A DNA stretch of 64,000 nucleotides from Macrostomum lignano (taxonomy: Eukaryota): assembly GCA_002269645.1 (NCBI GenBank), contig NIVC01000390.1, positions 539,516-603,515 on the forward strand, written 5' to 3'. Positions within the stretch are counted from its first letter, which is position 1. The number at the start of each line of letters is the position of its first letter. A program made the translations under genes and the position numbers. Below are positions 37,159 through 64,000 of the stretch, piece after piece. Under the pieces are notes generated by a model. That model saw nothing but the letters and a program-made list of their open reading frames with translations, was not told where the DNA came from and did no database searches.

Positions 37159-38519
37159 GCGCCCATTACCTGCCTGATCTGCCAGGGCGGCCTCAATGGC
37201 GACAGCATCTGCTCCGCTATGCCCGCCTGCGGCCACGTCTTCCACCGGACCTGCCTGGCCGCCTGGCTATCCTGCCGGGCCCGCCCAGCCATCTGTCCAG
37301 CCTGCAGGACGCCCGCCCCGTCACCCCCGCTCCGGTTGTACTTTTCAGCCGCCGGGGATGATGAGCAGAGCGACGGAGGCGAGGATGAGACGGCCGAGAG
37401 GAGCGCGCGAGAGCAGAGGGATCGTCGGGCTTCTGAGCAGCTAACGCGGGTTGGAGTTCCACTTCTAATTATTTGATATCGATAATTAGCGGCTAAATTT
37501 AAGGGCCTTAGGCCCGGATGCTGGGATGCCAAGACTCAATTGGGGAATGCTGAGGTGCCAAAGATCAGTTGGGGAATGCTGAGGTGCCAAAGATCAGTTG
37601 GGGAATGCTGAGGTGCCAAAGATCAGTTGGGGAATGCTGAGGTGCCAAAGATCAGTTGGGGAATGCTGAGGTGCCAAAGATCAGTTGGGGAATGCTGAGG
37701 TGCCAAAGATCAGTTGGGGAATGCTGAGGTGCCAAAGATCAATTGGGGAATGCTGAGGTGCCAAAGATCAGTTGGGGAATGCTGAGGTGCCAAAGATCGA
37801 TTGGGGAATGCTGAGGTGCCAACGATCAATTGGGGAATGTTGAGGTGCCAAAGATCAATTGGGGAATGCTGAGGTGCCAATCTTAATGGGGGAATGCTGG
37901 GAGCGACTCAGCTGCCACAAGAAACAGGCCATTTATTCGTTAAAATTTTAACAAAACTTTTGTAGCAATAAATTTAGCTTTGCTTTTATCAGGCTACTTT
38001 CAGTAGGTTGCGCGCACATTCTATTTAGATTATTTTATTTTTACATGGATTTCATCTTAACCCCCCACCCTGCCCCTTCCCCGCCAGGCGCTTGGCGCGC
38101 TTCGCACAGAGGAGGCCGGGCGGCGCCTGCTGGAGCGCCAGCTGGCGTCAACACGGCGCCGCCTTGCCCAGGCCGAGGCCGACCTGGCGCTGGCTGACCA
38201 GCGCGCCGAGGCGAAAGTGGCTGGCCGGATTCGCGAGCTCGAATCCCTGCTGGAGGTGCTGCAACCGGCCGCCACTACTGCCGCCACTGCCGCCATTTCA
38301 GACGAATCTCATGCCGTCGGATCGGTTCAACAGGCTCAGCAGGAGCAGCTGGGCCGCCTAGCCAAGGAGCTGGTGGTGCGGACTCTGTCATACACATCGG
38401 CGCCGCCTCATCAGTCTGGCAGGAGGCTGGCCCAGCAGCAGCAGCGATCGCGGCTTGCCATTCACCGGGATCGGCGGTTTGGTAGCCGCGGACGAGGGGA
38501 GAGCGCTGATGAACACTGA
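37159..38519 (+). CDS. RING-H2 plus coiled-coil E3 ligase B (paralogue of A; start codon not located)
   Basis: Exon 37159-37449 follows ACTTCCAG (APITCLIC...ACGHVFHRTCLAAWL...CPACR...LRLYF). Exon 38088-38519 is coiled coil and ends at TGA; phase 0. Confidence 0.7.
37520..37885. repeat. 29-bp intronic minisatellite (GGGGAATGCTGAGGTGCCAAAGATCAGTT)
   Basis: About 12 copies. Confidence 0.9.
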
Positions 38520-38521
38520 GG

Positions 38522-39143
38522 TCCTGAGCTGCCAAGACTCGGGGGGGGGGTGCTGAGCTGCCAAGACTCAGGGGGTGCTCAGCTGCCAAGAATCAGGGGG
38601 GGTGCTGAGCTGCCAAGACTCAGGGGGTGCTCAGCTGCCAAGACTCAGGGGGTGCTCAGCTGCCAAGAATCAGGGGGGGGGTGCTGAGCTTCCAAGACTC
38701 AGGGGTGCTCAGCTGCCAAGACTCAGAGAGGGGGTGCTGAGCTGCCAAGACTCAGGGGGTGCTCAGCTGCCAAGACTCAGAGAGGGGGTGCTGAGCTGCC
38801 AAGACTCAGGGGGTGCTCAGCTGCCAAGAATCAGGGGGGGGGTGCTGAGCTTCCAAGACTCAGGGGTGCTCAGCTGCCAAGACTCGGGGGGGGGGGTGCT
38901 GAGCTGTCAAGACTCAGGGGGGGGTGCTGAGCTGCCAAGACTCAGGGGGTGCTCAGCTGCCAAGACTCAGAGAGGGGGTGCTGAGCTGCCAAGACTTAGG
39001 GGGTGCTCAGCTGCCAAGACTCAGGGGGGGGGGTGCTGAGCTGCCAAGACTCAGGGGGGGTGCTGAGTTGCCAAGACTCAGGGGGGGGGGTGCTGAGCTG
39101 CCAAGACTCAGGGGGGGTGGGGGTGCTGAGCTGTCAAGACTCA
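38522..39143. repeat. Poly-G-variable minisatellite (GGGGGTGCT(C/G)AGCTGCCAAGACTCA)
   Basis: About 20 copies starting right after the RING-B stop; the unit resembles the 37520 array. Confidence 0.9.
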
Positions 39144-39559
39144 ATGGCGCACGGCACCCCAGACCTTTCTACGTATCGTTAAGGATCACAAGAAGTTTTT
39201 GATTTGCACACGAAAATTAAAGTCGTTTTTTCTTACATATTTTATAGTATGCTTAATGGTTCCTTTAAAATCTGTGTAAAATTTTAAAGCTTGCTTTCCG
39301 CACCTTACAAAATTTCTATCGCTTTTTTTCTAATCGATCGATTCTTGGAAGTATTGGACTGAGATTTGCCATCTGTCTTCTCCTTTCTGCTTGCGGCAAC
39401 CTGTATTTCAGGTTTTTTGTATTTTGTACAAATATATATTTTTATATGTAGATTAAGTCCTGCATTCAGTTATTCTTGTATATTAGCAGATCGAATTGCT
39501 GCTATAATTGCTTTTTGTTTGCATCATTTCCATTAATCACCACCCACCCATTTCTAGAA

Positions 39560-40115
39560 TCGCCCTGGACCCGCTTAGAGTTGCCCTCGACACACTTTTA
39601 GAAACGCCCTCGACCCACTTAGAATCGCCCTCGACCCACTTAGAATTGCCTTCGACCCACTTAGAATCGCCCTCGACCCACTCAGTTATCCTAGAATCAA
39701 CCTCGACCCACTCAGTTATTCTAGAATCAACCTCGACCCACTCAGTTATTCTAGAATCAACCTCGACCCACTTCTAGAATCAACCTCGACCCACTTCTAG
39801 AATCGCCCTCGACCCACTTCTAGAATCGCCCTCGACCCACTTCTAGAATCGCCCTCGACCCACTTCTAGAATCGCCCTCGACCCACTTAGAATCGCCCTC
39901 GACCCACTCAGTTCCTAGAATCAACCTCGACCCACTTCTAGAATCGCCCTCGACCCACTCAGTTATCCTAGAATCAACCTCGACCCACTTCTAGAATCGC
40001 CCTCGACCCACTCAGTTATCCTAGAATCAACCTCGACCCACTTCTAGAATCGCCCTCGACCCACTCAGTTATCCTAGAATCAACCTCGACCCACTTCTAG
40101 AATCGCCTTCGACCG
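39560..40115. repeat. 21-33-bp minisatellite (TAGAATCGCCCTCGACCCACT)
   Basis: Direct tandem copies with TCAGTTATCC variants. Confidence 0.9.
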
Positions 40116-40269
40116 ATATTTAAATTCGCCTTCTAACGAATTTTACTCTCGTAGAAGCACATTCTAGTGATGTAGAAGTTTTCCTTCAATTTTCGAAGCA
40201 TCCTACTATAAGTACTTCAAGTAAAAATGCGCGCATTTTGTTATAAAAATTGTAATAACTCGATTCCAG

Positions 40270-40479
40270 GCAGGCTGCGCTAGCCAGACAATCCGCAACC
40301 CGCTGCAGCTGTACAGGCACTTGCTCAGATTGGTGCGCACCCTGCCGCCCGGCGCCAGGCCCTACTATTCCAATTATATTCGCCAGGCCTACAACAGCCA
40401 CTCGGACGAGACCGACCCGGATCGGGTTCGTCAGATTATCGACCGAGCTCTGCTGGATGCCGACTGGGTAGTGAAGAAG
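40270..40479 (+). CDS. LYRM9: LYR-motif protein LYRM9 (main coding exon; start and final exon ambiguous)
   Basis: PLQLYRHLLR...YYSNYIRQAYNSHSDETDPDRVRQIIDRALLDADWVVKK closely resembles LYRM9 (PLQLYRYLLR...VRQSF..HSDEDNPERIQQII.RAIEDADWIMNK). Acceptor TTCCAG|40270, donor 40479|GTTAGC. Confidence 0.8.
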
Positions 40480-40559
40480 GTTAGCGGGGCTGTGTGTGCT
40501 GCTTGAGGGAGTTCTGATGAAGTTTTTAGCTGATAGGGGTAGGCAATGATATGCAGGTA

Positions 40560-40651
40560 GGCCAGACACAGACACTAAGACAGACAATAAGACAGACAGA
40601 CAGACATACAGACAGACAGACAGACAGACAATAAGACAGACAGACAGACAT

Positions 40652-40710
<59 letters not shown>

Positions 40711-40754
40711 CACTAAGACAGACAGACACTTTAGACACTAAGCTATAGACACTA

Positions 40755-40851
<97 letters not shown>

Positions 40852-40856
40852 CACTA

Positions 40857-40909
<53 letters not shown>

Positions 40910-41005
40910 CAGACAGACAGACAGACACACTAAGACAGACAGACAGACAGACACACTAAGACAGACAGACAGACAGACAGACACACTAAGACAGACAGAC
41001 AGACA
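40560..41005. repeat. (CAGA)n microsatellite in the intron after the LYRM9 exon
   Basis: Direct inspection. Confidence 0.95.
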
Positions 41006-41154
41006 CATTGGATAAATGATTACGGTGTTACTGGACGGCTGCCGTTGCAATTCTCAGCAGTAAACAGCCTGATTGCCGCAGCCAACAGTGCACTCAGTAC
41101 TTGCAACCCTCCCCCGCCGCTGCCTCAGTACGCCGCCCAGAAGCCGGCCGAGAA

Positions 41155-42583
<1,429 letters not shown>

Positions 42584-43080
42584 GCACCGCCTGCCGTGTG
42601 CATCCTCTGCCTTGTCCTAGTTTATATAGTGTGAGGCTTAAATAATAAGTATTAGGGGAATGGATTGCTAATCTAGCCAACGTCGATATGATGAAGGAAT
42701 AGAATGGATTGCTAATCTAGCCTACTTCATTTATAATGGAATAGAATGAATTGCTAATCTAGCTAAGATTAGATTGGTAATCAAGGTAAATAATAAATCA
42801 TCCGAGTATCTTCTTGCTAATGTGGAGCAAACAGTGCTAATCAATCAATCGATCAATAAACGCAAATAAATAAGCAATGCTTTTCGTGTCATTCAAAGCT
42901 TGTTTCATTTGTTAAAATGCGCTCTTATTGTTTAAATATACTCTATTCTGATCTGATTTAAGTTTTGTGTCTGGTGTCAGGCCTCAAGTGAAAAGGAATC
43001 AGTCAGTTGTTTTATTATTTGAATTTCGTCTAGATTTTATACACAAAATAAAACAAAACAAAACAAAATACATGAAACTA

Positions 43081-45150
43081 CGGGTTCGATCCTCCAGTGT
43101 CGGCGGCTGGAGAACACGATGGCCACGGTTTTAGGCTCAGATAGCGTGAGACCGCAGCTGAGCGCCCAGCTCTCGACACGGTAGGTGAAAGCTTGGTGGG
43201 AAGAGGTCTCTTAGGCCACAGTGGCGGTATCGTCCGCATGGCCGACCTTTTGAACCGGGTCCGGGTACGGGCTGCTGAGGACTCCACCTGTATGTACCTC
43301 CACAGAGCGGGAGTGTCTCAGGAGGTGCGAGGTGGCAGTACGATGGGAGACCATGTACATGATCCAGCGAGTGAGGTGCTCAAAAAGCGCATTATTGAAA
43401 GCACCATCAATGCCGAGGAAAAGCGAGAGCGCGTATCCACTGCCGAGTACGGCGCGCTCCAGCTTGTCGGCAATGGCATGCAGCGCGCCTTCGATGAAAC
43501 GTCTAGGTGTTCCATCAGTTTGAGGAAGACGTCAGACTGATAGGGCGGTAAGCTTTGGCAAAATGATAGTCTCCCTTCCCTGGTTTGGGTATAAAGACTA
43601 CCGTGGCCCTCTTGCCAGGCCTTGGGCACGTACCCGAGGGTAATGCTGGCCTTGAAGAGGTTGCAGAGGAGCCGGGAAACCTGTCATTTTTAACTGCCTC
43701 GCGGAGGAAGGCAGGATAAATATTGTCAGGTCCCTGTGACTTGAAGGTAGAGAAGGATTTTGCGGCGGGAGCCGTCCTCTCTCTGGTAATGATGGTCGAA
43801 GCCAGGATCTGTCCAACCGGACAGTGGTCCGGTGGGCCTAGCTGCGGTGCGGCACATGGGAAAGAGATGGTGAGCATGATGTCCAGCGATTCCCCGGGGT
43901 TCTCAGCGAGCCGGCCGTCCGGTTTTTTAATGACTGAGAGCTTTGACATTTTGTCGAGGGTGAGAGCCTTAACCACGCGTGAAGTAGGGCGGGTGCCTTC
44001 TAACTCCGCGCAGTATTGGCGCCACTTGTCGGACTTGGCTTTCCTGGTTTCACGCTTAAAGTCGCGGATCGCGTCCTGATAAGCGGCCAGGTCAGCTGGG
44101 TCCTTGATCTTGCGAGTTTTCCGTTGGAGGCACTTTGCTTTGCGCCGGAGGGATCCAAGTGCCAGGTGCCACCAAGGGCGGATTTTTTGCCTTTGTAGGC
44201 CTTAGAGGACAGGAGACCTCGTGGGCTGTCAGGACGGTCTTGCTGAGCAAGTCTGCAAGGTCATCCACTTTCTGACAGGAGGTAGAAACGACGGTGGTCA
44301 GCTTGATCTGTCTGGCATTTCAGGGTTTCCGCGAAGGCCGTCCAGATCAGGTGTTCAAGTGTTCCGGACGTTCCTTTTCCGTAGGATGTTAGACTTGGGG
44401 CGAGAGGATTGCAAGAGGAAGCGAACGAAGCGATGGTCAGACAGAGACTCCTCTTCGTCCCAAACCTCCCAGTCCCTGACCAAAGGAGCCAAACCGTGGG
44501 AGACTAGGGTCACGTCGTCCGTCCATCGCCCGTTGCCGAAGGTGGGGGTTCCACCTATGCTGCGAAACTCAGTACGTATTGGTGGTGTACATGCAGATGT
44601 AAGCAAGGAGTTACTTGCCTCTGCTGTTGGAGGCATTGCTGCCACAGTGAGTGTGGTGGGCCGTTAATGTCGCCCGCCACCAGCAGATCAAACCTGCGGT
44701 TAGAGCAGTAGTCCATGAGGGAGGTGAGGTTAGGGAGGTTCGCTTCCCTCGGGTTCTCCCTCTTTCTGCCCTCAGAAGGTGCTTGGTATTGGTATATACC
44801 ATGATTTTTTATTTTTGTCAAGACATACTTTAATACAATATACAATATGGCCAGACAGAATCATAGTCCAGATTTTAACTCAATCCATCTTCCATCATCT
44901 TAGCCCAGATCTTAGCCCAGATATTAGCCCAGATCTTAGCCCAGATCTTAGTCCAGACCTTAACACAATCTTAGCCGCCAGAGCAGCCCCGAGCGAGCTC
45001 AACTCGAGCTTCCAGGAACCGATCAGCGCCAGCCCAGCTGTGCCTGGGTTGGAAAATCCAGCTATTTTTGTGCCATAATGCCGCAGTGTGCAACGGCAGC
45101 TCCCAACCCCCCTCCCCTCCGTAGCCCTCTGCACTGATTCTCGCCAATAT
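43081..45150 (-). mobile_element. Decayed non-LTR retrotransposon (APE endonuclease plus RT; R1/LOA-like)
   Basis: Minus-strand fragments: LLVAGDIN and EESLSDHRFVRF (APE); VVFIPKPGKGDYHFAKAYRPISLTS, ALHAIADKLERAVLGSGYALSLFLGIDGAFNN, HADD and GLTLSEPKTVAIVFS (RT). Frameshifted, and truncated at ~43081. Confidence 0.85.
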
Positions 45151-45441
45151 CTCAGCCGTATCTCTCACTGCTGCTGCTAGCTGCTCATATCTGAGTGCTT
45201 ACGGGTGCTCAGCAGAGCTACAGGCTTACCGCTGCTCTCCGCCTACGCTGCCGTTCCGGAGGGCGACCGGCTGCCGCCTCGGGAATTCCTAGGCGCCTGC
45301 GGCTTTTCCAATGCCTCGAACGGATCGTCCGCCGGAGCGGGCAGCGCTATAAAATCACAGCTGAAAGAACTTCCCCTCAAGCAATTATAAGTCCTCTTCT
45401 AAAAGCAGAAATTAATTCAAGCAAGCATTAATATTGAAACA

Positions 45442-46409
45442 ATGCTTTCCGAAGGAAAGTTCTTTGTTATGCTCTGCCTCGCCGTCTCGCTCGCCTCTGC
45501 TCAACCTGCTGGCCGCGCAAGACCAGCAGCGAGCAACTTGGAGCTGGCAAAGAAGCACCTGACTCACGCTGCGGATGGGCTGCAAGCCTACGTCGAGAGC
45601 ATCAGATTGGTTCGCCTGCTGAACAAGTCCATCAGTTCGTCTCTGATCGACTTCTCTGAACTGCTGCCATCTGGTGCCAGCCTACGTACTCAGCTGCACC
45701 GATTTCTGCTCATTGTTAAGCGTCTGGAGAGTCAGGAGGAGCCGCATGAGACTGGGTGAGTCTTCAGCTGCCGCTTTCTGTGATTTGTTGAGCTCCTTTC
45801 TGAAAGGTGCAAATCACTCTCTGGTTGCTTCAGGGAGACCGTAATTGCTTTAGGGAAACTCTAACTGCTTTAGGGAAACTCAAATTACTTCAGGGAAACT
45901 CTAATTGCTTCAGGGAAACTCAAATTACTTCAGGGAAACTCTAATTGCTTCTGGGAAACTCTAATTGCTTCTGGGAAACTCTAATTGCTTCTGGGAAACT
46001 CTAATTGCTTCTGGGAAACTCTAATTGCTTCTGGGAAACTCTAACTGCTTTAGGGAAACTCTAATTGCTTCAGGGAAACTCAAATTACTTCAGAGAAACT
46101 CAAATTGCTTCAGGGACATAGGAGAACTACCTACTCTATAAAATCGCACTCAATCCACTGCCACTACTATTGCCATTACCCAGGTGGCTGAACCGGCTGG
46201 AATACATCAGGCAGAACGTGGCGCAAGCCTTCGACTACGTAGGAAGCCACTTTAATGACGCGGCAGCCGCCCCGCTGAGCGCCCAGCTACCAGACCGCCT
46301 GCTGCCGCCGGTGCCGCACAAGCAGCGAGAACGTCGGTATATGCGAGACTATGTTGTGATTGACTGGCTGCACAAGCAGGTCATGCGGTCAATTCAAGAG
46401 CTCGGTTGA
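45442..46409 (+). CDS. Secreted alpha-helical protein 1, putative four-helix cytokine-like, 179 aa
   Basis: Signal peptide MLSEGKFFVMLCLAVSLASA. Exons 45442-45755 and 46184-46409 (phase 2, GTGAGT/CCAG). Paralogous to 48827-51237. Confidence 0.75.
45830..46115. repeat. 20-bp intronic minisatellite (GGGAAACTCTAATTGCTTCA)
   Basis: About 14 copies. Confidence 0.9.
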
Positions 46410-53298: not shown

Positions 53299-56200
53299 AT
53301 GATGCGCGGAGGTCACTCCGCTCTGTCTGGGACTCCGATCAGTCTAAAGTACTTCTCAGGCGATGGGCCCTGTGTATTACAAAGCGAGCTGCTGCTTGTC
53401 CAGCCTGTACCAATTAAGACATTAGCTCAGCTGCGCAATGTCCTACTCGCCAAAGCGAAGCACTTCCGTCCAGAGCATCGATTTCGTTCTTTGTCTGGCG
53501 AGCTTGTGCCAATCGATATGGAATCCTGCTTGGCCTTTAACTGCGTGCTGCGCAGCACCAACAGCGTGTTTGTCATTGGTGATGGCGAGAATATTGGTAC
53601 GCTAGTGATTCATTTTGTTTTGGAATACTTTATTTCTCTAGTCTAGGAGATCTGGTGAAGATTTAAATTACATTAAAATTTGATTGAGATTGGATTTCAT
53701 TCAGATTTACGATTGGACAGAGATTGGATAGAGAATAGAGATCAGATTGAGATCTGGTTGAGATATATAGGATAGAGATCTGGCTGAGATAGGATTGAGA
53801 TCTGGCTGAGATAGGATAGAGATCTGGTTGAGATAGGATACAGATCTGGCTGAGATAGGATAGAGATCTGGCTGAGATAGGATAGAGATCTGGCTGAGAT
53901 AGAATAGAGATCTGTTGTAGAGATTAGACAGATTAAAAAGTAAGTTCGCATTTCATTGCTCCTTTTACATTAAGTACCCAGTCAGTTGCCATGCTCTGAT
54001 TCCTCATCCTTTATAATTTGAAAACCCAGCCTGCGACAGCCTCGAAGTCGGCATCGTGTTAACTTCGCCAATCAATGGCGACGAGTTGCCAGTCGGTTTT
54101 GTGGACATCTCGCCGCGCGAGAGCCTGGAACAGCTGCGCAAGCGGGCGGCCGTCTTCCTGCCTCTGCTGGCGGGCTGCGAGTTTCTGTTTCTGAACAGGC
54201 GCGGCTGGCCTGTCAGCGAGCTGTACGAGGCTCGGCTAAGAGTGCACGAAGTGCTGGATCACCGCAGGAGTGTGTCGGTGGCGCCGCTAAGTCGGATGCA
54301 GGTGTAGTGGGGACTAGGACACTCGGAGTAGCTATTGGGGATTGAGATCGGATTCTTATGATTGGAAATTGGAAAATTTGGGATAACTTTTTTAGTTGGG
54401 TAAACGTTTTATTTGGGATCGGGATTCTTATATCTTGGGATAATTTGTTGGTTGAGGATTTTGATGGGCATCGGGATTCTTATAATTTGAGATAATTTAT
54501 GAGTTGAGGATAATGATGAGGATCGGGATTCTTATAATTTGAGATAATTTATAAGTTGGGGATAATGATGGGGATCGGGATTCTTATAATTTGAGATAAT
54601 TTATGAGTTGAGGATAATGATGAGGATCGGGATTCTTATAATTTAAGATAATTTATAAGTTGGGGATAATGATGAGGATCGGGATTCTTATAATTTGAGA
54701 TAATTTATAAGTTGGGGATATTGATGAGGATCAGGATTCTTATAATTTGAGATAATTTATAAGTTGGGGATAATGATGAGGATCGGGATTCTTATAATTT
54801 GAGATAATTTATAAGTTGGGGATATTGATGAGGATCGGGATTCTTATAATTTGAGATAATTTATAAGTTGGGGATATTGATGAGGATCGGGATTCTTATA
54901 ATTTGAGATAATTTATAAGTTGGGGATATTGATGAGGATCGGGATTCTTATAATTTGAGATAATTTATAAGTTGGGGATATTGATGAGGATCGGGATTCT
55001 TATAATTTGAGATAATTTATAGGTTGAGGATATTGATGAGGATCGGGATTCTTATAATTTGAGATAATTTATAAGTTGGGGATATTGATGAGGATCGGGA
55101 TTCTTATAATTTGGGATAATTTATAAGTTGGGGATATTGATGAGGATCGAGATTCTTATAATTTGGGATAATTTATAAGTTGGGGATATTGATGAGGATC
55201 GGGATTCTTATAATTTGAGATAATTTATAAGTTGAGGATATTGATGAGGATCAGGATTCTTATAATTTGAGATAATTTATAAGTTGAGGATATTGATGGG
55301 GATCGAGATTCTTATAATTTGGGATTATTTATGAGCTGGGATATTGATGGGGATCAGGATTCTTATAATTTGGGATTATTTATGAGCTGGGATATTGATG
55401 TAGATTTTTTAAATTAGATTACATAATGAAAATTATATTAAACAATTCCTAGGCCGATGTTCGCCTCCTTGCCGGGGCCTCGGCCGCCGCTCACGCCATC
55501 CCCGCCTGCCCAGCAACAGCGGCAGCAGCCTCGCCCTCGCTTGCACCCGTGCTGCTTCCGTCAGCGCGGCAGCCGCCCCAGACTCCGCTGCCGCCGGCCG
55601 CGCCATACCGGCCGCACAGCTCATTGGCGGTAGCGAGCAGCAGCAACCTGGCTGGTACCGCCGCTGGCGGCAAGCGGCACCTGGAACAGTTGCTAGGCGA
55701 CGCTGACCTGCTGCAGGGCCGTCATTCGGGCCGATCGGCCGCCAAAGACATGCTAATTAGCTATGTGAGAGCAGAGGCTGCTCACGTGGCTGTTGTGCTC
55801 AAGGAGAAGCTCACGGCTCTGGGCTGCTCCGTGTTTCTGGTAAGTCTGCTCTGGAGTCAATGTTTGAGTTGGTTTAGTTGATTCGTTTCCGGGGCTTGAC
55901 AGTCAAATCGAAATCTAGAATATCAAATTTATGGGAAAAATTATCCATGTGAAATCGGAATCCAAAATCCCAAATTTATGGGGAACATTGGTTCCCAGTG
56001 AAATCGGAATCCAAAATCCCAAATTTATGGGGAAAATTGTCCCAGTGAAATCGGAATCCAAAATCCCAAATTTATGGGGAAAATTGTCCCAGTGAAATCG
56101 GAATCCAAAATCCCAAATTTATGGGGAACATTGGTTCCCAGTGAAATCGGAATCCAAAATCCCAAATTTATGGGGAAAATTGTCCCAGTGAAATCGGAAT

Positions 56201-59200
56201 CCAAAATCCCAAATTTATGGGGAACATTAGTTCCCAGTGAAATCGGAATCCAAAATCCCAACTTTATGGGGAAAATTGTCCCAGTGAAATCGCAGTCCAG
56301 AATCACGAAAGTTTGGGGGAAATATCCCAGACATTTTAGATTTTAAGCGTCTCAAAATTTATGATTAAAAAATCCCCAAAACCTGCACACCCCACCTGTT
56401 TTCCATTCCCTCAACTCCACTCTTTGCAGGATGTCGACGAGATCGCTCTGGGCTCCGACTGGCAAGACGCTTTGAACGACGCGGTGGCAGCCACGGAGGT
56501 CTTCATCCCCTTGGTGACCCCCCGGTACGGCGCCACCCAGTGGACCAATAGAGAGGTGAAGCTGGCGGACGTGCTTGGCAAAGAGATTCTGCCTATCAAC
56601 TTCATCTCCGACTGGCCACCTCGCTGCCTAGCGATCCAGTTTGCCACCACGCAGTTTGTGCCCTGGTCTGGCGCGTGTAAGTGCTTGAGTTGGGGCTCGG
56701 GGCGCATTGGGACTCGGTTTTGGCTGTACTGGGACTCGGTTTTGAGTTGTACTGGGACTCGCTTTCAGGCTGTACTGGGACTCGCTTTCAGGCTGTACTG
56801 GGACTCGCTTTCAGGCTGTACTGGGGCTCGCTTTCAGGCTGTACTGGGACTCGCTTTCAGGCTGTACTGGGACTCGCTTTCAGGCTGTACTGGGACTCGC
56901 TTTCAGGCTGTACTGGGGCTCGCTTTCAGGCTGTACTGGGACTCGCTTTCAGGCTGTACTGGGACTCGCTTTCAGGCTGTACTGGGACTCGCTTTCAGGC
57001 TGTACTGGGACTCGCTTTCAGGCTGTACTGGGACTCGCTTTCAGGCTGTACTGGGACTCGCTTTCAGGCTGTACTGGGACTCGCTTTCAGGCTGTACTGG
57101 GACTCGCTTTCAGGCTTCATTGCGCAATTGTATCTCGTTTTCTAACTGATCAATAACTAACGTCTACTAATTAATCTATTCATAATCAGCCATATATGTA
57201 GAGAAAATAAAGCGCCTATAGCCAAGCCTAACTAAAGCAACAACCCAGTTTCTGACTAATTAGACAGACTTTATTTAAGGTATTTCAACCTAGCGACCTC
57301 ATTCTAGCAGTAGTGCTCACATAACAGTCACAATAGCTATACCCTCTGTTTTTGATAAAAAATCTTATCTGAATTTTAGTTGCGAAAGCGGGTTAACGAG
57401 TGTAGCCATGAAGTGCGGTTGGCAATCTGCTAATTTGGCAGGTGAATGCCATGTGCTAATGACCATTCAGCTGCGCTGTCTTGCGTGGTGCTTTTCTAGA
57501 ATAGAATGTTTTCGGTGGTGGTGGTTCAAGTCTCTCGAATTTTTATATTGGGAGGCTCTCTGCTGTATCTTCTGAGGGTCATTCAGTGAACTGCTGTATC
57601 TTCTGAGGGTCATTCAGTGAACTGCTGTATCTTCTGAGGGTCATTCAGTGAACTGCTGTATCTTTTGAGGGTCATTCAATGAACTGCTGTATCTTCTGAG
57701 GGTCATTCAGTGAACTGCTGTATCTTCTAAGGGTCATTCAGTGAACTGCTGTATCTTCTGAGGGTCATTCAGTGAACTGCTGTATCTTCTGAGGGTCATT
57801 CAGTGAACTGCTGTATCTTCTGAGGGTCATTCAGTGAACTGCTGTATCTTCTAAGGGTCATTCAGTGAACTGCTGTATCTTCTGAGGGTCATTCAGTGAA
57901 CTGCTGTATCTTCTGAGGGTCATTCAGTGAACTGCTGTATCTTCTGAGGGTCATTCAGTGAACTGCTGTATCTTCTAAGGGTCATTCAGTGAACTGCTGT
58001 ATCTTCTGAGGGTCATTCAGTGAACTGCTGTATCTTTTGAGGGTCATTCAGTGAACTGCTGTATCTTCTGAGGGTCATTCAGTGAACTGCTGTATCTTCT
58101 AAGGGTCATTCAGTGAACTGCTGTATCTTCTGAGGGTCATTCAGTGAACTGCTGTATCTTTTGAGGGTCATTCAGTGAACTGCTGTATCTTCTGAGGGTC
58201 ATTCAGTGAACTGCTGTATCTTCTAAGGGTCATTCAGTGAACTGCTGTATCTTCTGAGGGTCATTCAGTGAACTGCTGTATCTTCTAAGGGTCATTCAGT
58301 GAACTGCTGTATCTTCTGAGGGTCATTCAGTGAACTGCTGTATCTACTGAGGGTCATTCAGTGAACTGCTGTATCTTCTGAGGGTCATTCAGTGAACTGC
58401 TGTATCTACTGAGGGTCATTCAGTGAACTGCTGTATCTACTGAGGGTCATTCAGTGAACTGCTGTAGGCTCTGAGGGTCATTCAGTGAACTGCTGTAGGC
58501 TCTGAGGGTCATTCAGTGAACTGCTGTAGGCTCTGAGGGTCGTTCAGTGAACTGCTGTAGGCTCTGAGGGTCATTCAGTGAACTGCTGTATCTTCTGAGG
58601 GTCGTTCAGTGAACTGCTGTATCTTCTGAGGGTCGTTCAGTGAACTGCTGTATCCTCTGAGGGTCATTCAGTGAACTGCTGTAGCCTCTGAGGGTTCTTC
58701 CTCTAACACTGAGCCATCCTGCTAGATGCCAGACGGATTTCCTCCAACCCGCAGACGACATCGAGTCGGCCAACATCAATGACGAGGCCGGCCGGGTGGC
58801 CGAGGAGATCCGGCGGCAGTTCGACGCCAACAAGCGGCGCCCGCCGGAGTCCAAGTCGGATGAGAGAGGAAGCGCGATGGGGCCGCCTGTGAGTTTGAGA
58901 AGGAAAGGGCGGGCTTAGAGGAGTGCCAGAGAATATAATGGAGTGCCAGAAACTATACGGGGAGAGTTCCAGAGACTATAGAAGAGCGCCACAGACTATA
59001 GAAGAGCGCCAGAGACTATTGTGGTGATGGGGCTCAAGGGCTCGGTCCTTTCGTGCCCCTTTCCCAGACCCGGATTCGCGTACTGACCCTGGCTGCGGTC
59101 CTCCACTGACACGCGTACGACGCGGTGTCTGTCGGGACTAGGCTGCTCGAGCGTACGACGCACGACAGCCTACAGACTCGCGTACGACGCAGAGCTGCTT

Positions 59201-62200
59201 GGGGTGGGACCGGCGTACGACACACTTAATCCCCCTAAGGTGCCTAGTACAGAGGCAGACCCAAATGACTTGCAAATTGGAAGGCTTACCAGCCGCGATT
59301 TCGGTCGTACAACAAGACCATACATGCGCAACAGTCGGCCGAGTCGGCCGATCCGGCCGACCGATTTGGCAGCCAATCAAGGAAGTCGCAAAAATGCCCA
59401 TCCGAAAAAATACCAAAGTAGTATTACTAAGTAGCTGACGAGGCATTTTGACCTAATAAGACAGTCATAGTTACTCCTGCCGTTTACCCAAAGTTGCGTT
59501 AATTTTGCGTATGGTTTTTTTAATTACATGTAAGTCGCATTTTGGCCAAAAACTACGTCGCATTTTTGTTAAAACTAAGTCGCATGGCCGACTGAATTTT
59601 GGAGGTTGCGCATGTATGAACAAGACACAGCGCCGTCAGAGCAGTGGTAGTATTGATCGGTATTCTTTTAATTGTATTTGTATCGCAATTAACGCTGGCA
59701 CTATCACCGGGGAGCCACGAAGAAGACGAGAATGGGGTCTCAAGGGGGTCCGAATAAATAGGCAGCAAACTGGGGGTTGAGGGCGCGGGATAAAGGCAGA
59801 AAAGGGGGCTTAGACATCAGCATAGGAAAAACATGAGCCGTACCAGCCAATCGCCGGGGCGCAGCACGGCAGACTGGGACTGGCAGCCAATCACAAACAG
59901 GGGCGGGGCAGCAAAGCTAACAAAAGAATGGGGCGGGGTCGCACGGGGTGCACACAGAGCAAGGGGGGTTTGACTAAACGGAAAAGGCCTAGGCAGGGAG
60001 GGGGGTACGCACACGCAGAAGTGCAGGTGGGTGAGTCAGAAAATATCTGAGGAGGGGGGAGAGGACGGCCAACTGGCCCGGCCTAGCAAAGTAGCAAAGT
60101 ACACACAGTCATAATAACACATTCATGACACTATACTCGTAGAAGAGCGCCAGAGACTTTAGAAGAGCGCCAGAGACCATAAAAGAGTGCCAAAGACTAT
60201 AGGAGAGCGCCAGAGACTTTAGAAGAGCGCCAGAGACCATAAAAGAGTGCCAAAGACTATAGGAGAGCGCCAGAGACTTTAGAAGAGCGCCAGAGACCAT
60301 AAAAGAGCGCCACAGACTATAGAAGAGCGCCAGAGACTATAGAAGAGCGCCAGAGACTATAGAAGAGCGCCAGAGACTATAGAAGAGCGCCAGAGACTAT
60401 AGAAGAGCGCCAGAGACTATAGAAGAGCGCCAGAGACTATAGAAGAGCGCCAGAGACTATAGAAGAGTACCAGAGACTAATGGAGAGGGCCAGAACGTGA
60501 ATAAGCGCTTACCAAGCTAAACAATCGTTGAATTTCAGAGCTTCAAGCGAAAGCCGACCTGCCTATCGATAATGTCTCGCAAGTCAATAAAGTTCCGTCA
60601 GTCCAAGTAAGACTCGATTATTGTATCAGATTGTTCTTTTTTACTCTGGCCACTGTATCTTAGTGTGCACTTCTTCTCACACTGCTCTAGAGAGATCGAC
60701 CAATTCAACGAACAGCAACAGAATCTCCAGCAGCAGCAACAGCAGCAAAGGAAGCAATCCCTGCACCAGCTGCACCAGCAGCAGACACTCCGGACTGTGC
60801 AATCAAGCCTAGATGAAGATGAGGCAGTGTACCGAGCTCTGATGAGCAATCGTCAAGTGGTTGTTAGTTACCATGCCGACGATTTTGCCAAAGCCGATCA
60901 GCTGCACTCGGCTCTGGTTAATCGGAATTTCAAAGTCTCCGTCTTTGCTATCAGCTGCTCGGTTCGCTGCTCAGCTGACGTCGGCGGCGGCTCCCAGGAG
61001 GCCGCAGCTGCCGGTACGTCGGATGCCGCTGTTGCTGCCGCTCCTGCAGCAGCCAGCGGAGCCGGCGGCGGCGACTCGGCTGGCAGTCAGGGCAGCTCGA
61101 TTGGCATGAGGCGTGAGTGCCAATATCGGGAAGTGAGCAATGAGTGCAGTGTGCCATGGCAGTGTGCCATTTTCTACTGCGTGTGTTTATGGCTTGGGAG
61201 TTCAGTGTGCCGTTTTCTAATGCGTGTGTTTATGGCTTGGGAGTGCAGTGTGCCATTTTCTACTGCGTGTGTTTATGGCTTGGAAGTGCAGTGTGCCATT
61301 TTCTAATGCGTGTGTTTATGGCCATCTTTTCCAATGGCGACTTTTGGAAGTGTGATTCTGAAGCTACTTTACCTAGCTACTGTCAACTGTGCACTTGGCC
61401 GATATGTTGTGTATGAAATGTTTCAAATCGCCTTCGCATAGGCACCTTAAGGTTTAAGTGACAGAAAAAGCCGGCAAGGCAGGTGTTCCATCTCAACCTG
61501 CGCCTGCAGGTATCGGCTCCCGCGAGACTCTGATTCTCGGCGACGAGCTGGACACCTGCTCCCACTCGTCGGTAGAGCAGGCGGGCGACGAGTCTCGTGA
61601 AAGCCTGCTAGACTTTCAGACCAAGGCCGACTCGGCTGGCGCCGCCGTCTTCATCGTGTCAGACAGCTTCTTGTCGTCTAGGAGCTCTAGGAACCATGTG
61701 AGACTGACGTTACAGAATCAGGAGTTTTTTCTTCTCTTGCTACTGTTTACTTAAGCTAAGAGTAGTGTAATACGCGTTTTAGTTATTCTATGGTACTACT
61801 TATATATAAATAGTTAACAGTAGCATAATATGCATTTTAATGATTTAAACTTTTTTGCCAAAAAATTCTAGATATTCTACTGCGAACAGCGGAAGCACAT
61901 GATTCCGGTGCTGTGCGGCAACGTGCAGCTGCCCACTTGGCTTACTATGCTGTTGGAGGGCAGCAACTCTGTTGTGAGAGTGTTTCCTGTGCCTCTGGGT
62001 TTGGGGCTTATTTGAATTTTTTATTTGACATACAAAAATAATTAACTTCTCATAAAAACAATGGTATCATCAATAACCTCTCCATAAAACACAGGTACAA
62101 TAAATAAACTGGCCATAAACACACAGGCAGCATAAATAAACTGGCCATAAACACACAGGCAGCATAAATAAACTGGCCATAAACACACAGGCAGCATAAA

Positions 62201-63626
62201 TAAACTGCCCATAAACACACAGGCAACATAAATAAACTGGCCATAAACACACAGGCAGCATAAATAAACTGGCCATACATGTAAACACACAGGCAGCATA
62301 AATAAACTGGCCATAAACACACAGGCAGCATAAATAAACTGGCCATAAACACACAGGCAGCATAAATAAACTGGCCATACATGTAAACACACAGGCAGCA
62401 TAAATAAACTGGCCATAAACACACAGGCAGCATAAATAAACTGGCCATAAACACGCAGGCAGAATAAATAAACTGGCCATAAACACACAGGCAGCATAAA
62501 TAAACTGCCCACAAATACACAGGCAGCATAAATAAACTGCCCACAAATACACAGGCAGCATAAATAAACTGCCCACAAATACACAGGCAGCATAAATAAA
62601 CAGCCCATAAACACACTGATATCCCATTGACTGCGCAGAGCTCGGAGCAGCCAGGCTGGCCGGAGAAGGTGGCCGGTCACCTGGAGACCATATTCGATCC
62701 CAACACAATGGCCTACATGCACAAGAGCAAGGCGCTGGACTTTCGCATTGACAAGCTGGCCCAGATGGTGAAGTCTCACCTGCCAGCTAATAAATGGTTT
62801 ATCTATGTGTGCCGCAGCAAGCGCCTGGCCAACAGGTGCACAGACTCGGTGTGCAAGGCGCTCGGCGAGGCGCTGGCCCAGCTGGACTGGGTCGGCCTGG
62901 TCACCGGCGGCGGCCCCGGCGCCGACCAGATCGTGTCGCGCCAGTTCAGCTATAGCCGCAGACAGAACAACCAACCGGAGGACACCTGGCACCTGTTGCA
63001 CGACAGCGGCGGCGATAAATCGTCTTCCACATCGGCAGCCGCAGCGCCAAAGTCGCCAAACACCCCGCCACAGTTCGGCAAGAGCCTCGTGTGCGGCGAC
63101 TCCGCTGCCGAGAGGCTGCAAATCGCCGCCCACCTGTGCAGCCTCTGCCTGCTGATTGAGGGCGGCACGAAATCTGTGGAAGAGGCCGACCAGTTCATGT
63201 GGCACGACAAGGTGGTGCTGCCGCTCAAGTGCCTTGGCGGCGCCGCGGCCAGCTACTATGGAGAGAGCGAGCGGCGCTTTGAGGTAGCAGATTTTATTTT
63301 TTTTTGTCATCGATTTTTAATGTTTGCACGCAAAAAATATTAGACATTTCCGTTACTTGCTACTTTCGATGCTGATAGGTAGGATAATTTGCATCGGATA
63401 ACAAATTTAATACTGGAAACTATAACTGTACACTGCTTAGGTGCCTCCGGGCGTTAGTCAGAAACTGTGGAGTAAACTGGCGGTGCCGCTAGACTGCGGC
63501 AATTACACTGCCGAGCACCTGGTGGCCAACGTGCTCAAAATTATTCACAGCCTGCGCGGCTACGAGAAGCGAGCAGCTGCTCAGCAGCGGCCGGGCTTCC
63601 TCTGCAGGCTAAGAGGAACCACGTGA
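53299..63626 (+). CDS. Multidomain protein Ubl-like x2 / TIR (catalytic-position Glu) / degenerate TIR / SLOG, ~991 aa, 11 exons
   Basis: Exons 53299-53596, 54030-54301, 55453-55839, 56430-56674, 58726-58888, 60539-60606, 60691-61112, 61510-61697, 61872-61973, 62639-63283 and 63441-63626; phases are compatible and the total is 2976 nt. TIR: MLISY...VFL|DVDEIALGSDWQDALNDAV...FIPLVTPRY..TQWTNREV..A...K.ILP. SLOG: LVTGGGPGAD, LLIEGGTKSVEEA, VLPLKCLGGAA. Confidence 0.8.
53720..53915. repeat. 22-bp intronic minisatellite (GAGATCTGGCTGAGATAGGATA)
   Basis: About 8 copies. Confidence 0.85.
54400..55400. repeat. 52-bp intronic minisatellite (GATGAGGATCGGGATTCTTATAATTTGAGATAATTTATAAGTTGGGGATATT)
   Basis: About 19 copies. 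Confidence 0.95.
55905..56300. repeat. 47/49-bp alternating intronic minisatellite (AAATCGGAATCCAAAATCCCAAATTTATGGGG...)
   Basis: About 8 copies with a higher-order 96-bp dimer. Confidence 0.9.
56705..57116. repeat. 23-bp intronic minisatellite (GGGACTCGCTTTCAGGCTGTACT)
   Basis: About 17 copies, most containing TTTCAG|G. Confidence 0.95.
57575..58693. repeat. 31-bp intronic minisatellite (TCTGAGGGTCATTCAGTGAACTGCTGTATCT)
   Basis: About 36 copies ending ~30 nt before exon 5. Confidence 0.95.
58920..60495. repeat. 20-bp minisatellite (AGAAGAGCGCCAGAGACTAT) split by an insertion
   Basis: Copies at 58920-59019 and 60140-60495. Confidence 0.9.
59020..60130 (-). mobile_element. Solo LTR (1111 bp), 4-bp TSD
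   Basis: TGTGGTGA...TCATGACA termini (TG...CA with a short imperfect inverted repeat), CTAT on both sides, no coding capacity. Orientation is tentative, based on a minus-strand ATTAAA near 59670. Confidence 0.7.
61140..61322. repeat. 43-bp intronic repeat x4 (GTGCAGTGTGCCATTTTCTA.TGCGTGTGTTTATGGCTTGGGA)
   Basis: Direct tandem copies after the exon-7 donor. Confidence 0.85.
62050..62616. repeat. 32-bp intronic minisatellite (AAACACACAGGCAGCATAAATAAACTGGCCAT)
   Basis: About 17 copies. Confidence 0.95.
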
Positions 63627-63754: not shown

Positions 63755-64000
63755 ACTGATCAATCACACTGGGGAAATCATCTATCACACTGGGGAAATC
63801 ATCAATCACAATTGGGAAATCATCAATCACAATCGGGAAATCATCAATCACAATCGGGATATCATCAATCACAATTGGGAAATCATCAATCACAATCGGG
63901 AAGTCATCTATCACAATTGGGAAATCATCAATCACAATCGGGAAATCATCTATCACAATTGGGAAATCATCAATCACAATCGGGAAATCATCAATCACAA
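63755..64000. repeat. 21-bp minisatellite (ATCAATCACAATTGGGAAATC), running off the window end
   Basis: Direct tandem copies. Confidence 0.9.

What the first reader, a model, noticed from the sequence alone, without database searches (positions are those of the whole stretch)
53299..63626. Intron-containing animal gene fusing an enzymatic-type TIR to a SLOG domain: a Thoeris-like nucleotide-signalling module in one polypeptide
Seen: 11 exons join in frame to ~991 aa. TIR-1 (exons 3-4) has ISY...FLDVDEI..G.DW...L..AV....VFIPLVTPRY..TQWTNREV, with Glu (codon 56553-56555) at the WxxxE position. A second TIR-like unit (VVVSY...AAVFIVSDSFLSSRSSRNH|IFYCEQRKHMIPV) lacks that Glu. The C-terminal exon has SLOG hallmarks (LVTGGGPGAD; LLIEGG..S..EA; VLP...GGAA). 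There are no LRR, TM, ARM or SAM segments, so it is not a TLR, MyD88 or SARM1. Established: TIR domains with this Glu cleave NAD+ (SARM1, plant TNLs, ThsB); in type I Thoeris the TIR-made cyclic ADPR isomer binds the SLOG domain of ThsA; SLOG-like domains also occur at the TRPM N-terminus. Inference: a self-contained writer-plus-reader of an ADPR-type second messenger, i.e. a little-characterised animal immune or stress signalling system. GT-AG introns argue against bacterial contamination.
Basis: partly seen in the sequence, partly recalled or inferred. Interest (0 to 1): 0.9.

Follow-up and report, generated by a model that had tools for sequence, protein, structure and literature searches.

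The report
Flatworm TIR–TIR–SLOG gene, already catalogued
This is a real, already annotated flatworm (Macrostomum lignano) gene for a cytosolic protein that joins two ubiquitin-like domains, an NAD+-cleaving TIR domain, a dead TIR domain and a nucleotide-binding SLOG domain; the family is conserved from sponges to acorn worms, its architecture is already in public tables, and what the SLOG domain does is still untested.

Summary
Eleven GT-AG exons (53299-63626, + strand) join into a 982-aa protein. It is 100% identical to the deposited Macrostomum lignano protein PAA84089.1 (BOX15_Mlig017568g1).

Domains found:
- TIR-1, with the catalytic Glu361 (codon 56553-56555) aligned to SARM1 E642;
- TIR-2, a degenerate TIR with His672 in place of the Glu;
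- a C-terminal SLOG domain, whose predicted fold best matches the ThsA SLOG bound to 3'cADPR.

Orthologues occur in sponges, Trichoplax, echinoderms, hemichordates, molluscs, annelids, nemerteans, a priapulid and chelicerates.

It is not new. A 2026 preprint tabulates the near-identical paralogue (A0A267GNU3) as TIR(Glu360)+TIR(His671)+SLOG. The same preprint shows that the TIR of the starfish orthologue makes canonical cADPR.

The "writer plus reader" reading is only partly supported. No separate effector domain exists. Canonical cADPR does not activate ThsA. The Macrostomum SLOG has lost 21 of 56 family-conserved positions.

My best reading is a ligand-gated TIR NAD+ cyclase/hydrolase built like TIR-STING, TIR-SAVED or SARM1. 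The SLOG ligand and the output remain unknown.

The parts
53299..63626 (+). Whole gene: 11 coding exons, ATG 53299 to TGA 63624-63626. Encodes the 982-aa protein BOX15_Mlig017568g1 (PAA84089.1).
   Evidence: Exon model. 100% identity to the deposited protein. 98.5% identical to the paralogue P0001, with no differences at exon junctions.
53356..53592 (+). Ubiquitin-like domain 1 (aa ~20-98, exon 1). It is degenerate: it lacks the family's GWPV motif.
   Evidence: hhalign of repeat 1 against repeat 2 gives probability 99.2%, E 1.3e-19. AF2 model has pLDDT 87.5. Foldseek hits are ISG15, USP7 UBLs and di-ubiquitin, E ~1e-5.
54032..54289 (+). Ubiquitin-like domain 2 (aa ~101-186, exon 2). It carries the conserved N-G-W-P-V...E motif (W159, P160, E166).
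55741..56676 (+). TIR-1, the catalytic-type TIR (aa 287-402). It spans the end of exon 3 and exon 4, with intron 3 inside.
   Evidence: Pfam TIR_2 E 7.4e-18. SARM1 TIR is the best PDB sequence match. ThsB model scores 1.7e-11. 63 of 67 family-conserved positions are kept.
56553..56555 (+). Codon GAG for Glu361, the predicted catalytic glutamate in the W357-x-x-x-E361 helix.
   Evidence: Sequence read. Aligned with SARM1 E642. Conserved in at least 90% of 42 orthologues.
60845..61973 (+). TIR-2, a degenerate non-catalytic TIR-like domain (aa ~521-706, exons 7-9). It has an ~85-aa Ala/Ser/Gly-rich insert after the second strand.
   Evidence: TIR_2 in 23/23 orthologues, best 3.2e-8; this protein 4.8e-4. 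Weak TLR/MyD88 profile matches. Listed as TIR 523-725 in Table S2 of the 2026 preprint.
61695..61697 (+). Codon CAT for His672. It occupies the position of the catalytic Glu in TIR-2 (Gln in most orthologues).
   Evidence: Alignments. The preprint lists His671 for the paralogue.
62732..63560 (+). SLOG domain (aa ~738-961, exons 10-11, intron 10 inside).
   Evidence: AF2 pLDDT 89.3, pTM 0.87. Foldseek top hit is 7uxs_A, ThsA SLOG + 3'cADPR, E 2.3e-6, followed by LOG, MoCo carrier, PpnN and TRPM. LDcluster4 in 25/25 and STALD in 20/25 orthologues.
62903..62920 (+). First glycine-rich loop of the SLOG domain, T795-G-G-G-P-G800 (family consensus TGGFYG).
   Evidence: It is the only stretch of this protein that Pfam LDcluster4/YAcAr picks up.
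63158..63184 (+). Second SLOG motif, E880-G-G-T-K-S-V-E-E888 (family consensus EGGPGAAHE; LOG motif PGGxGTxxE). Glu888 is kept, and the third Gly is replaced by Lys884.
   Evidence: ThsA residues G399 and E403 contact the ligand. The correspondence to G884/E888 is inferred from motif spacing, not from a superposition.

Best explanation
Identity. The locus is the annotated Macrostomum lignano gene BOX15_Mlig017568g1. It is one of two ~98.5%-identical copies of a family found across non-vertebrate animals. The family architecture is UBL-UBL-TIR(Glu)-TIR(no Glu)-SLOG, it is soluble, and it is presumably cytosolic.

Most likely mechanism:
- TIR-1 is the only catalytic output. It cleaves NAD+ and cyclises ADP-ribose to cADPR. 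This was shown for the isolated TIR of the starfish orthologue and is inferred here from near-identical sequence.
- The SLOG domain is a nucleotide-binding regulatory module, most probably for an ADP-ribose-type ligand. Ligand binding would change the oligomeric state and so switch TIR-1 on or off. Precedents are STING or SAVED domains gating fused TIR NADases, the ARM domain gating SARM1, and the ThsA SLOG gating SIR2. The ligand could be TIR-1's own product (a self-amplifying loop) or a nucleotide made elsewhere.
- TIR-2 is a catalytically dead partner that helps build the TIR-TIR interfaces an active site needs.
- The two UBL domains are docking or autoinhibitory modules.
- The output is either a cADPR/Ca2+ signal or local NAD+ loss.

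Shown versus inferred. Shown: the gene model, the domain identities, the conservation, and the orthologue's cADPR synthesis. Inferred: every step that involves the SLOG domain, TIR-2 and the UBLs.
For: Gene and identity.

TIR-1:
- TIR_2 scores 65.6 bits.
- SARM1 is the best solved relative, with E361 aligned to E642, W357 to W638 and Y294/R296 to Y568/R570.
- 63 of 67 family-conserved positions are kept.
- 42/42 members hit the ThsB model.
- The Patiria orthologue TIR is recorded as active, cADPR 'yes', and Glu-dependent. It belongs to the same 90% cluster as P0049 in my alignment.

SLOG as a nucleotide binder:
- The model is confident.
- The best structural match is the ThsA SLOG bound to 3'cADPR. 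ADPR-gated TRPM2 and AMP-bound LOGs are also among the hits.
- STALD hits in 20/25 orthologues and ThsA models in 10/42.
- The same SLOG subfamily is fused elsewhere to Macro domains (ADP-ribose binders/hydrolases) and to ion-channel domains. One stand-alone copy sits beside a NUDIX gene.

No other effector domain.

Precedents: SLOG-controlled oligomer change in ThsA and NMN-gated SARM1.
Against: - No experiment addresses the SLOG domain of any family member.
- The window's own SLOG falls below Pfam thresholds.
- It has lost 21 of 56 conserved positions, including Gly884->Lys and Glu866->Leu, and it replaces a conserved loop with a disordered Ser/Ala/Pro stretch. Ligand binding may therefore be altered or lost in Macrostomum specifically.
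- The SLOG keeps the Arg865/Glu888 pair that is catalytic in LOG enzymes, so an enzymatic role is not excluded.
- The isolated starfish TIR was weak: it needed 4 h induction, and NAD+ depletion is not marked for it in Table S4.
- Domain-domain contacts were not modelled.
Confidence: 0.5

Rival explanations
1. Two-enzyme pathway on one chain. The SLOG domain is a LOG-like N-glycosidase/phosphoribohydrolase that processes a nucleotide. It might trim or destroy the TIR-1 product (signal maturation or termination) or release a free base. It would not act as a receptor.
For: - The family motif EGGPGAAHE matches the spacing of the LOG catalytic motif PGGxGTxxE. The SVRERE stretch supplies an invariant Arg865 where LOGs have their catalytic Arg. 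Both Arg865 and Glu888 are kept even in the eroded Macrostomum copy.
- LOG, PpnN and YgdH nucleosidases are strong structural matches.
- PMC9503650 argues that SLOG domains can either sense ADPr derivatives or cut the 1'-ribosyl N-glycosidic bond, and that they are often fused to Macro/NADAR processing domains. Macro fusions were seen here too.
Against: - The best structural match is the non-catalytic ThsA sensor, and the Pfam hits are to the STALD/LDcluster4 clades rather than Lysine_decarbox/LOG.
- Fusions of the same subfamily to ion channels fit a sensor role better.
- The same Arg/Glu positions are ligand contacts in ThsA, so keeping them does not discriminate between the two roles.
- The third motif glycine is lost in Macrostomum.
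Confidence: 0.25
2. One reading: a closed writer-plus-reader loop. [quoted passage not shown] This would be a one-protein Thoeris. It is a sub-case of the best explanation, scored separately.
For: Both Thoeris part types are detected in one polypeptide: ThsB model in 42/42 members and ThsA STALD model in 10/42. The top fold match is ThsA SLOG + 3'cADPR. The orthologue TIR makes a cyclic ADPR.
Against: - The product seen is canonical cADPR, which does not activate ThsA SLOG proteins.
- No binding data exist.
- A reader fused to its own writer gives no obvious gain unless it drives cooperative assembly.
Confidence: 0.2
3. A non-enzymatic TIR adaptor or scaffold of a Toll/IL-1-like pathway, as was proposed generically for conserved invertebrate TIR proteins. 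The catalytic signature and the SLOG fold would be vestigial.
For: Conserved invertebrate TIR-domain proteins have been hypothesised to act as adaptors or regulators (PMC6321704). Two TIR domains plus UBLs could serve as interaction platforms.
Against: The catalytic Glu, Trp and the Tyr/Arg pocket residues are conserved in sponges, Trichoplax, protostomes and deuterostomes. The orthologue TIR is active. SLOG motifs are conserved in most orthologues.
Confidence: 0.05

Closest known systems
Type I Thoeris (ThsB TIR + ThsA SIR2-SLOG) of bacteria
   Same: A catalytic-type TIR that matches ThsB models. A SLOG domain of the STALD/LDcluster4 kind whose predicted fold is closest to the ThsA SLOG bound to 3'cADPR.
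   Different: The two parts are on one polypeptide rather than two genes. There is no SIR2 or other effector attached to the SLOG. The orthologue's product is canonical cADPR, not 3'cADPR, and canonical cADPR does not activate ThsA. It is an animal gene with introns, plus UBL domains and a second dead TIR.
SARM1 (ARM-SAM-SAM-TIR NADase)
   Same: SARM1 is the closest solved TIR by sequence. The catalytic Glu, Trp and pocket residues align. A regulatory nucleotide-binding domain in the same chain as the TIR is the proposed logic.
   Different: There are no ARM or SAM domains. The regulatory domain is a SLOG at the C-terminus. There is an extra degenerate TIR and N-terminal UBLs.
TIR-STING and TIR-SAVED effectors (bacteria; TIR-STING also in oysters)
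   Same: The design principle is a second-messenger receptor domain fused to a TIR NADase that is activated by ligand-induced assembly. The SAVED_TIR model gives weak hits to TIR-1 in 36/42 members. The oyster TIR-STING precedent is cited in the 2026 preprint.
   Different: The receptor fold is SLOG, not STING or SAVED. The ligand is unknown, and assembly has not been shown.
LOG / PpnN nucleotide N-glycosidases and the TRPM2 N-terminal SLOG-like (MHR1/2) ADPR site
   Same: Same Rossmann-like SLOG fold with a Gly-rich loop and a GGxG...E motif.
   Different: Sequence similarity is only sub-threshold. The domain is not attached to a channel or used as a stand-alone enzyme, and catalytic competence is untested.
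The same family as recorded in bioRxiv 10.64898/2026.04.20.719644 (Table S2: A0A267GNU3; Table S4 no. 129: Patiria miniata A0A914B4U3)
   Same: The paralogue, 98.5% identical, is listed as TIR 287-421 (Glu360), TIR 523-725 (His671) and SLOG 757-955. The starfish orthologue TIR makes cADPR.
   Different: The preprint tested only the isolated TIR of the starfish protein. It does not discuss the SLOG domain, the second TIR or the N-terminal UBLs.

Membership tests
Catalytic (NADase/cyclase-type) TIR domains | TIR fold recognised by a curated model above its threshold | tested here: met
   Pfam TIR_2 scores 65.6 bits against a cut-off of 28, aa 292-399.
Catalytic (NADase/cyclase-type) TIR domains | Glutamate in the alpha-C helix (WxxxE) aligned with SARM1 E642, plus the conserved Trp | tested here: met
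   W357 and E361 align with SARM1 W638 and E642. They are conserved across 42 orthologues.
Catalytic (NADase/cyclase-type) TIR domains | NAD+ cleavage that depends on that Glu | not testable with these tools
   Shown only for the isolated TIR of the starfish orthologue (cADPR; a point mutation abolishes it). Not tested for the Macrostomum protein.
SLOG superfamily (LDcluster4 / STALD clades) | Match to a curated SLOG model above threshold in this protein | tested here: not met
   LDcluster4 scores 13.8 bits against a cut-off of 26.3, and only aa 776-807 match. Orthologues: 25/25 hit LDcluster4 (best 1.1e-11) and 20/25 hit STALD (best 6.3e-7).
SLOG superfamily (LDcluster4 / STALD clades) | Rossmann-like three-layer fold closest to solved SLOG proteins | tested here: met
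   AF2 pLDDT 89.3. 97 PDB matches at E<=1e-3; the 50 listed are ThsA SLOG, TM1055, LOG, MoCo carrier, PpnN, YgdH and TRPM.
SLOG superfamily (LDcluster4 / STALD clades) | Gly-rich loop after strand 2 and the GGxG...E motif after strand 4 | tested here: inconclusive
   TGGGPG is present. The second motif reads EGGTKSVEE, so Glu888 is kept but the third Gly is Lys884. 21 of 56 family-conserved positions are changed.
SLOG superfamily (LDcluster4 / STALD clades) | Binds or processes a nucleotide | not testable with these tools
   No data exist for any family member.
Thoeris defence system | ThsB-type TIR signal generator | tested here: met
   PADLOC ThsB model PDLC00434 scores 1.7e-11 for this protein and matches 42/42 orthologues.
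Thoeris defence system | ThsA-type effector: a SLOG (or Macro) sensor fused to an effector such as SIR2 or TM | tested here: not met
   No SIR2, TM or other effector domain is present. ThsA STALD models hit 10/42 orthologues but not this protein.
Thoeris defence system | Messenger is a non-canonical cADPR isomer (3'cADPR in type I) read by the SLOG | not testable with these tools
   The orthologue TIR gave canonical cADPR only in Table S4. Canonical cADPR does not activate ThsA. Nothing was measured for this protein.
SARM1 | ARM + two SAM domains N-terminal to the TIR | tested here: not met
   Pfam finds none. The N-terminus is two UBL domains.
Toll-like receptors / MyD88-type adaptors | LRR ectodomain plus TM, or a death domain | tested here: not met
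   No such Pfam hits. The maximum 19-residue hydropathy is 1.33, so no TM segment.

The most novel reading that the evidence does not exclude
Non-vertebrate animals, from sponges to hemichordates, carry a one-protein, Thoeris-like circuit. On a trigger sensed through the UBL/TIR-2 scaffold, TIR-1 makes a cyclic ADP-ribose. The SLOG domains of neighbouring molecules bind it and drive cooperative assembly, giving a self-amplifying switch that ends in Ca2+ signalling or NAD+ collapse. This would be an ancestral metazoan nucleotide-signalling immune executor. No vertebrate, insect or nematode name appears among the 120 best hits.
Probability: 0.2. Interest if true: 0.8.

Novelty: already known. 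Interest (0 to 1): 0.45.

Why it matters
TIR enzymes and SLOG sensors are the two halves of bacterial Thoeris immunity. Whether animals use TIR-made nucleotides as signals is an open question that has only just been raised experimentally.

This family is the one place where both halves sit in a single animal protein. The protein is conserved in sponges, placozoans, protostomes and deuterostomes. TIR-1 is about 70% identical between sponge and flatworm.

Showing what the SLOG binds, and whether it gates the TIR, would directly test whether Thoeris-like nucleotide signalling exists in animals.

The locus itself adds little. The gene is annotated, its architecture is tabulated, and the Macrostomum SLOG is a derived copy. 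Orthologues with the canonical motifs are better experimental subjects.

Tried and rejected
- Pfam on the whole protein found only TIR-1. The SLOG domain and TIR-2 appeared only when orthologue segments were scanned.
- A profile-profile comparison of TIR-2 with TIR-1 aligned only the first 34 columns at 38% probability. The long insert defeats it, so I relied on Pfam and PDB profile hits instead.
- A profile search of the SLOG alignment against PDB sequences gave only sub-threshold hits: TM1055, LOG and TRPM2, E 0.1-0.3, mixed with short-chain dehydrogenases through the Gly-rich loop. The fold search was needed.
- The N-terminal profile had no Pfam or PDB sequence match.
- Burroughs et al. 2015, which defined the SLOG clades, could not be read, and a text search for 'LDcluster4' found nothing. 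Whether that paper already notes animal TIR-SLOG fusions is therefore unverified.
- The family's name in the 'ecTIR-DC' classification could not be checked, because the defining paper is not held.
- Bacterial contamination is rejected: ten GT-AG introns, 100% identity to a flatworm protein, and eukaryotic neighbours.
- A pseudogene is rejected: the frame is intact and the paralogue differs only by 14 substitutions and one codon.

Full report
**1. What is in the sequence.**
The region 53299-63626 (+ strand) holds eleven open segments. They join through ten GT...AG introns into a 2949-nt reading frame of 982 codons plus TGA.

The exon coordinates are:
- 53299-53596
- 54030-54301
- 55453-55839
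- 56430-56676
- 58755-58888
- 60539-60606
- 60691-61112
- 61510-61697
- 61872-61973
- 62639-63283
- 63441-63626

The translation is 982/982 identical to the deposited Macrostomum lignano protein PAA84089.1 (BOX15_Mlig017568g1, UniProt A0A267GFP0).

A second copy on another scaffold is P0001 = PAA86952.1 = A0A267GNU3, 981 aa. It differs by 14 substitutions and one codon, and none of the differences lies at an exon junction.

Nearly every intron is filled by its own minisatellite, which is why the exons stand out.

**2. Domains.**

*(a) N-terminus.* Residues ~20-98 and ~101-186 are two copies of one ~85-residue domain. Profile-profile comparison gives probability 99.2%, E 1.3e-19. The domain has no Pfam or PDB sequence match.

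The AlphaFold2 model (pLDDT 87.5) matches tandem ubiquitin-like proteins: ISG15, the USP7 UBL pairs, FAT10 and linear di-ubiquitin. There are 89 PDB hits at E<=1e-3. The low TM-scores (0.3-0.4) reflect the different angle between the two lobes.

*(b) TIR-1 (aa 287-402, exons 3-4).* The evidence:
- Pfam TIR_2 scores E 7.4e-18, 65.6 bits against a cut-off of 28.
- The best solved relative is the SARM1 TIR. Y294/R296, D320, W357 and E361 align with SARM1 Y568/R570, D594, W638 and E642.
- The domain is about 70% identical between flatworm, sponges, Trichoplax and deuterostomes.
- The window protein keeps 63 of the 67 positions that are at least 85% conserved in 41 orthologues.

*(c) TIR-2 (aa ~521-706, exons 7-9).* TIR_2 is below threshold in this protein (E 4.8e-4, 21 bits). 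It is found in 23 of 23 orthologue segments, best 3.2e-8. A profile of the segment weakly hits TLR and MyD88 TIR domains over the strand-helix that normally carries the Glu.

In that register the Glu position is Gln in most orthologues and His672 here (codon 61695-61697). An ~85-residue Ala/Ser/Gly-rich insert follows the second strand. TIR-2 is thus a conserved but catalytically dead TIR.

*(d) SLOG (aa ~738-961, exons 10-11).* The window protein alone gives only LDcluster4 E 0.044 over the first Gly-rich loop. All 25 orthologue segments hit LDcluster4 (best 1.1e-11), and 20 hit STALD, the ThsA-type SLOG family (best 6.3e-7).

The AlphaFold2 model is confident (pLDDT 89.3, pTM 0.87) and has alternating strand-helix units. 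Its best PDB match is the Bacillus cereus ThsA SLOG domain bound to 3'cADPR (7uxs_A, E 2.3e-6, TM 0.62/0.70). The next matches are TM1055, LOG enzymes, MoCo carrier protein, PpnN, YgdH and the N-terminal domains of TRPM channels.

*(e) Nothing else.* There is no LRR, ARM, SAM, death or SIR2 domain and no hydrophobic segment long enough for a membrane span.

**3. How the window copy compares with its family.**
The SLOG domain is the most eroded part of the Macrostomum protein. It keeps only 35 of 56 family-conserved positions.

Specific changes:
- The second motif reads EGGTKSVEE instead of EGGPGAAHE, so the third Gly is now Lys884.
- Glu866 is now Leu.
- The conserved loop 'RDxQDRSxQAxQNxDGTF' is replaced by a Ser/Ala/Pro-rich stretch that the model leaves disordered.

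Arg865 and Glu888 are kept. In ThsA the ligand is held by E403 (ribose hydroxyls), by S290, R371 and K388, and by the backbone of G289 and G399 (bioRxiv 10.1101/2022.05.07.491051). By motif spacing, G399/E403 should correspond to position 884 and Glu888, and G289/S290 to the TGG loop. This is an inference, not a superposition.

**4. Distribution and relatives.**
A word-indexed search returned 176 proteins. The best 120 have E-values from 0 to about 1e-79, and most are 750-1050 aa long.

The named hits come from:
- homoscleromorph sponges (Corticium, Oscarella)
- Trichoplax
- crinoids, sea urchins, starfish and brittle stars
- hemichordates
- gastropods, bivalves, a chiton and an octopus
- annelids and nemerteans
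- a priapulid
- spiders, scorpions, ticks, mites and horseshoe crabs

About 43 of the 120 carry a precomputed PF18306 (LDcluster4) hit. Tardigrade members are listed in the 2026 preprint. No vertebrate, insect, nematode or cnidarian name appears among the 120. This is an observation about that list, not proof of absence.

An exhaustive HMM search with the SLOG profile found 787 representative clusters at E<=1e-3, and 92 at E<=1e-30. Below the orthologues, the same SLOG clade appears in several contexts:
- fused to voltage-gated-type ion-channel domains (P0182, P0188);
- fused to Macro domains (P0178, and P0202 together with a response regulator);
- fused to a dual-specificity phosphatase in a diatom (P0225);
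- as ~200-aa stand-alone proteins. One of these, in a cyanobacterial MAG, lies next to a NUDIX hydrolase gene.

Macro and NUDIX partners point to ADP-ribose-type ligands. Channel fusions point to a sensor role. This is contextual evidence from a few examples.

PADLOC models give a compact summary. All 42 family members hit a ThsB TIR model (this protein at 1.7e-11). Ten of 42 also hit a ThsA STALD model, but this protein does not.

**5. What is already known.**
- Table S2 lists A0A267GNU3 with TIR 287-421 (Glu360), TIR 523-725 (His671) and SLOG 757-955, together with tardigrade members.
- Table S4, entry 129, is the TIR of Patiria miniata A0A914B4U3. Its sequence is '...LISYVRAEASQYAL...TQWTNRELKLADIL...'. 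It is marked active after 4 h induction and cADPR-positive.
- That protein sits in the same 90% cluster as P0049 of my alignment.
- The text says activity was lost on mutating the Glu in all cases, and it draws a SLOG domain in Figure 3A.
- It does not discuss the TIR-SLOG combination.

Conserved invertebrate TIR proteins had earlier been grouped as 'ecTIR-DC' families with suggested adaptor roles. I could not check which group this family belongs to. I also could not read Burroughs et al. 2015, which defined the SLOG clades.

**6. Mechanism.**
The only domain with a catalytic signature that acts on NAD+ is TIR-1. The SLOG fold is known in two modes.
- *Sensor mode.* The ThsA SLOG binds 3'cADPR and re-arranges the oligomer to switch on SIR2. 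TRPM2 also appears among the fold matches.
- *Enzyme mode.* LOG and PpnN cut N-glycosidic bonds. Iyer et al. argue that SLOG domains may do either in NAD+/ADPr networks.

This protein has no effector downstream of the SLOG. The parsimonious design is therefore sensor plus TIR effector, as in TIR-STING, TIR-SAVED and SARM1. TIR-2 would supply the partner surface that TIR active sites need, and the UBLs would serve as docking or autoinhibitory modules.

It is weakened because the only product reported is canonical cADPR, which ThsA-type SLOGs do not respond to. It is not excluded, because this SLOG clade may have a different specificity.

The enzymatic alternative remains open, because Arg865 and Glu888 serve both roles.

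**7. Verdict.**
The finding is real and accurately described, and the domain calls are right.

The object is not new. The gene is annotated, orthologues carry TIR_2 + LDcluster4 annotations, a near-identical paralogue is tabulated with exactly these three domains, and an orthologue's TIR has been assayed.

What remains open, and interesting, is the role of the SLOG domain, of the dead TIR and of the newly noted tandem UBLs.

Noticed in passing
window 53738-53914, 54416-55400, 55900-56330, 56708-57116, 57560-58695, 60140-60494, 61159-61322, 62068-62616, 63759-64000: Almost every intron of the gene, and the 3' flank, holds its own distinct minisatellite. Periods range from 20 to 52 bp, with up to 37 copies at 88-96% identity. 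Several of these arrays create long spurious ORFs.
   Followed up: partly
window ~59020-60140 (intron 5): The 20-bp minisatellite TAGAAGAGCGCCAGAGACTA occurs on both sides of a ~1.1-kb non-repetitive, GC-rich stretch, as if something had inserted into the array. The only inverted repeat found was a single 14-nt pair inside it, at 59319-59332 and 59605-59618. Its nature is unknown.
   Followed up: partly
window 12045-13847, 18786-20591, 24138-26054 (+ strand): Three tandem, apparently intronless ORFs of ~600 aa lie about 6 kb apart. They are 78% and 53% identical to the first. The second and third have an N-terminal C3HC4 RING finger hit, so this is a local RING-protein gene cluster.
   Followed up: partly
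window 29359-30528 and 30881-31747 (+ strand); 33546-34901 (+ strand): The first two ORFs hit DEAD and Helicase_C and are probably two exons of one DEAD-box helicase gene. The third ORF is a RING-H2 protein.
   Followed up: no
window 6001-8000 (ORF 6094-7125): This stretch has very strong strand asymmetry (GC skew -0.51, AT skew -0.45). It contains a 343-aa ORF with no Pfam match and is probably repeat-derived.
   Followed up: no
window 1-27000 versus 28000-46000: GC content steps from about 0.33-0.47 to 0.49-0.55 near 28 kb and falls again after 46 kb.
   Followed up: no
P0001 (PAA86952.1), on another M. lignano scaffold: A second copy of the gene is 98.5% identical at protein level with the same exon junctions. 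This is consistent with the duplicated state of this genome.
   Followed up: yes
P0182, P0188, P0178, P0202, P0225; locus L001 6001-6618: The same SLOG clade (LDcluster4) occurs fused to ion-channel domains, to Macro domains and to a dual-specificity phosphatase. A stand-alone copy in a cyanobacterial MAG lies beside a NUDIX hydrolase gene. The channel-SLOG fusions resemble TRPM logic and may be ligand-gated channels.
   Followed up: partly
alignment A1, N-terminal repeats (window aa 153-166): Each UBL repeat of the family carries a nearly invariant F-x-D-x-N-G-W-P-V-x(3)-Q-E motif. It is retained in repeat 2 but lost in repeat 1 of the Macrostomum protein. It looks like a binding surface of unknown partner.
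   Followed up: no
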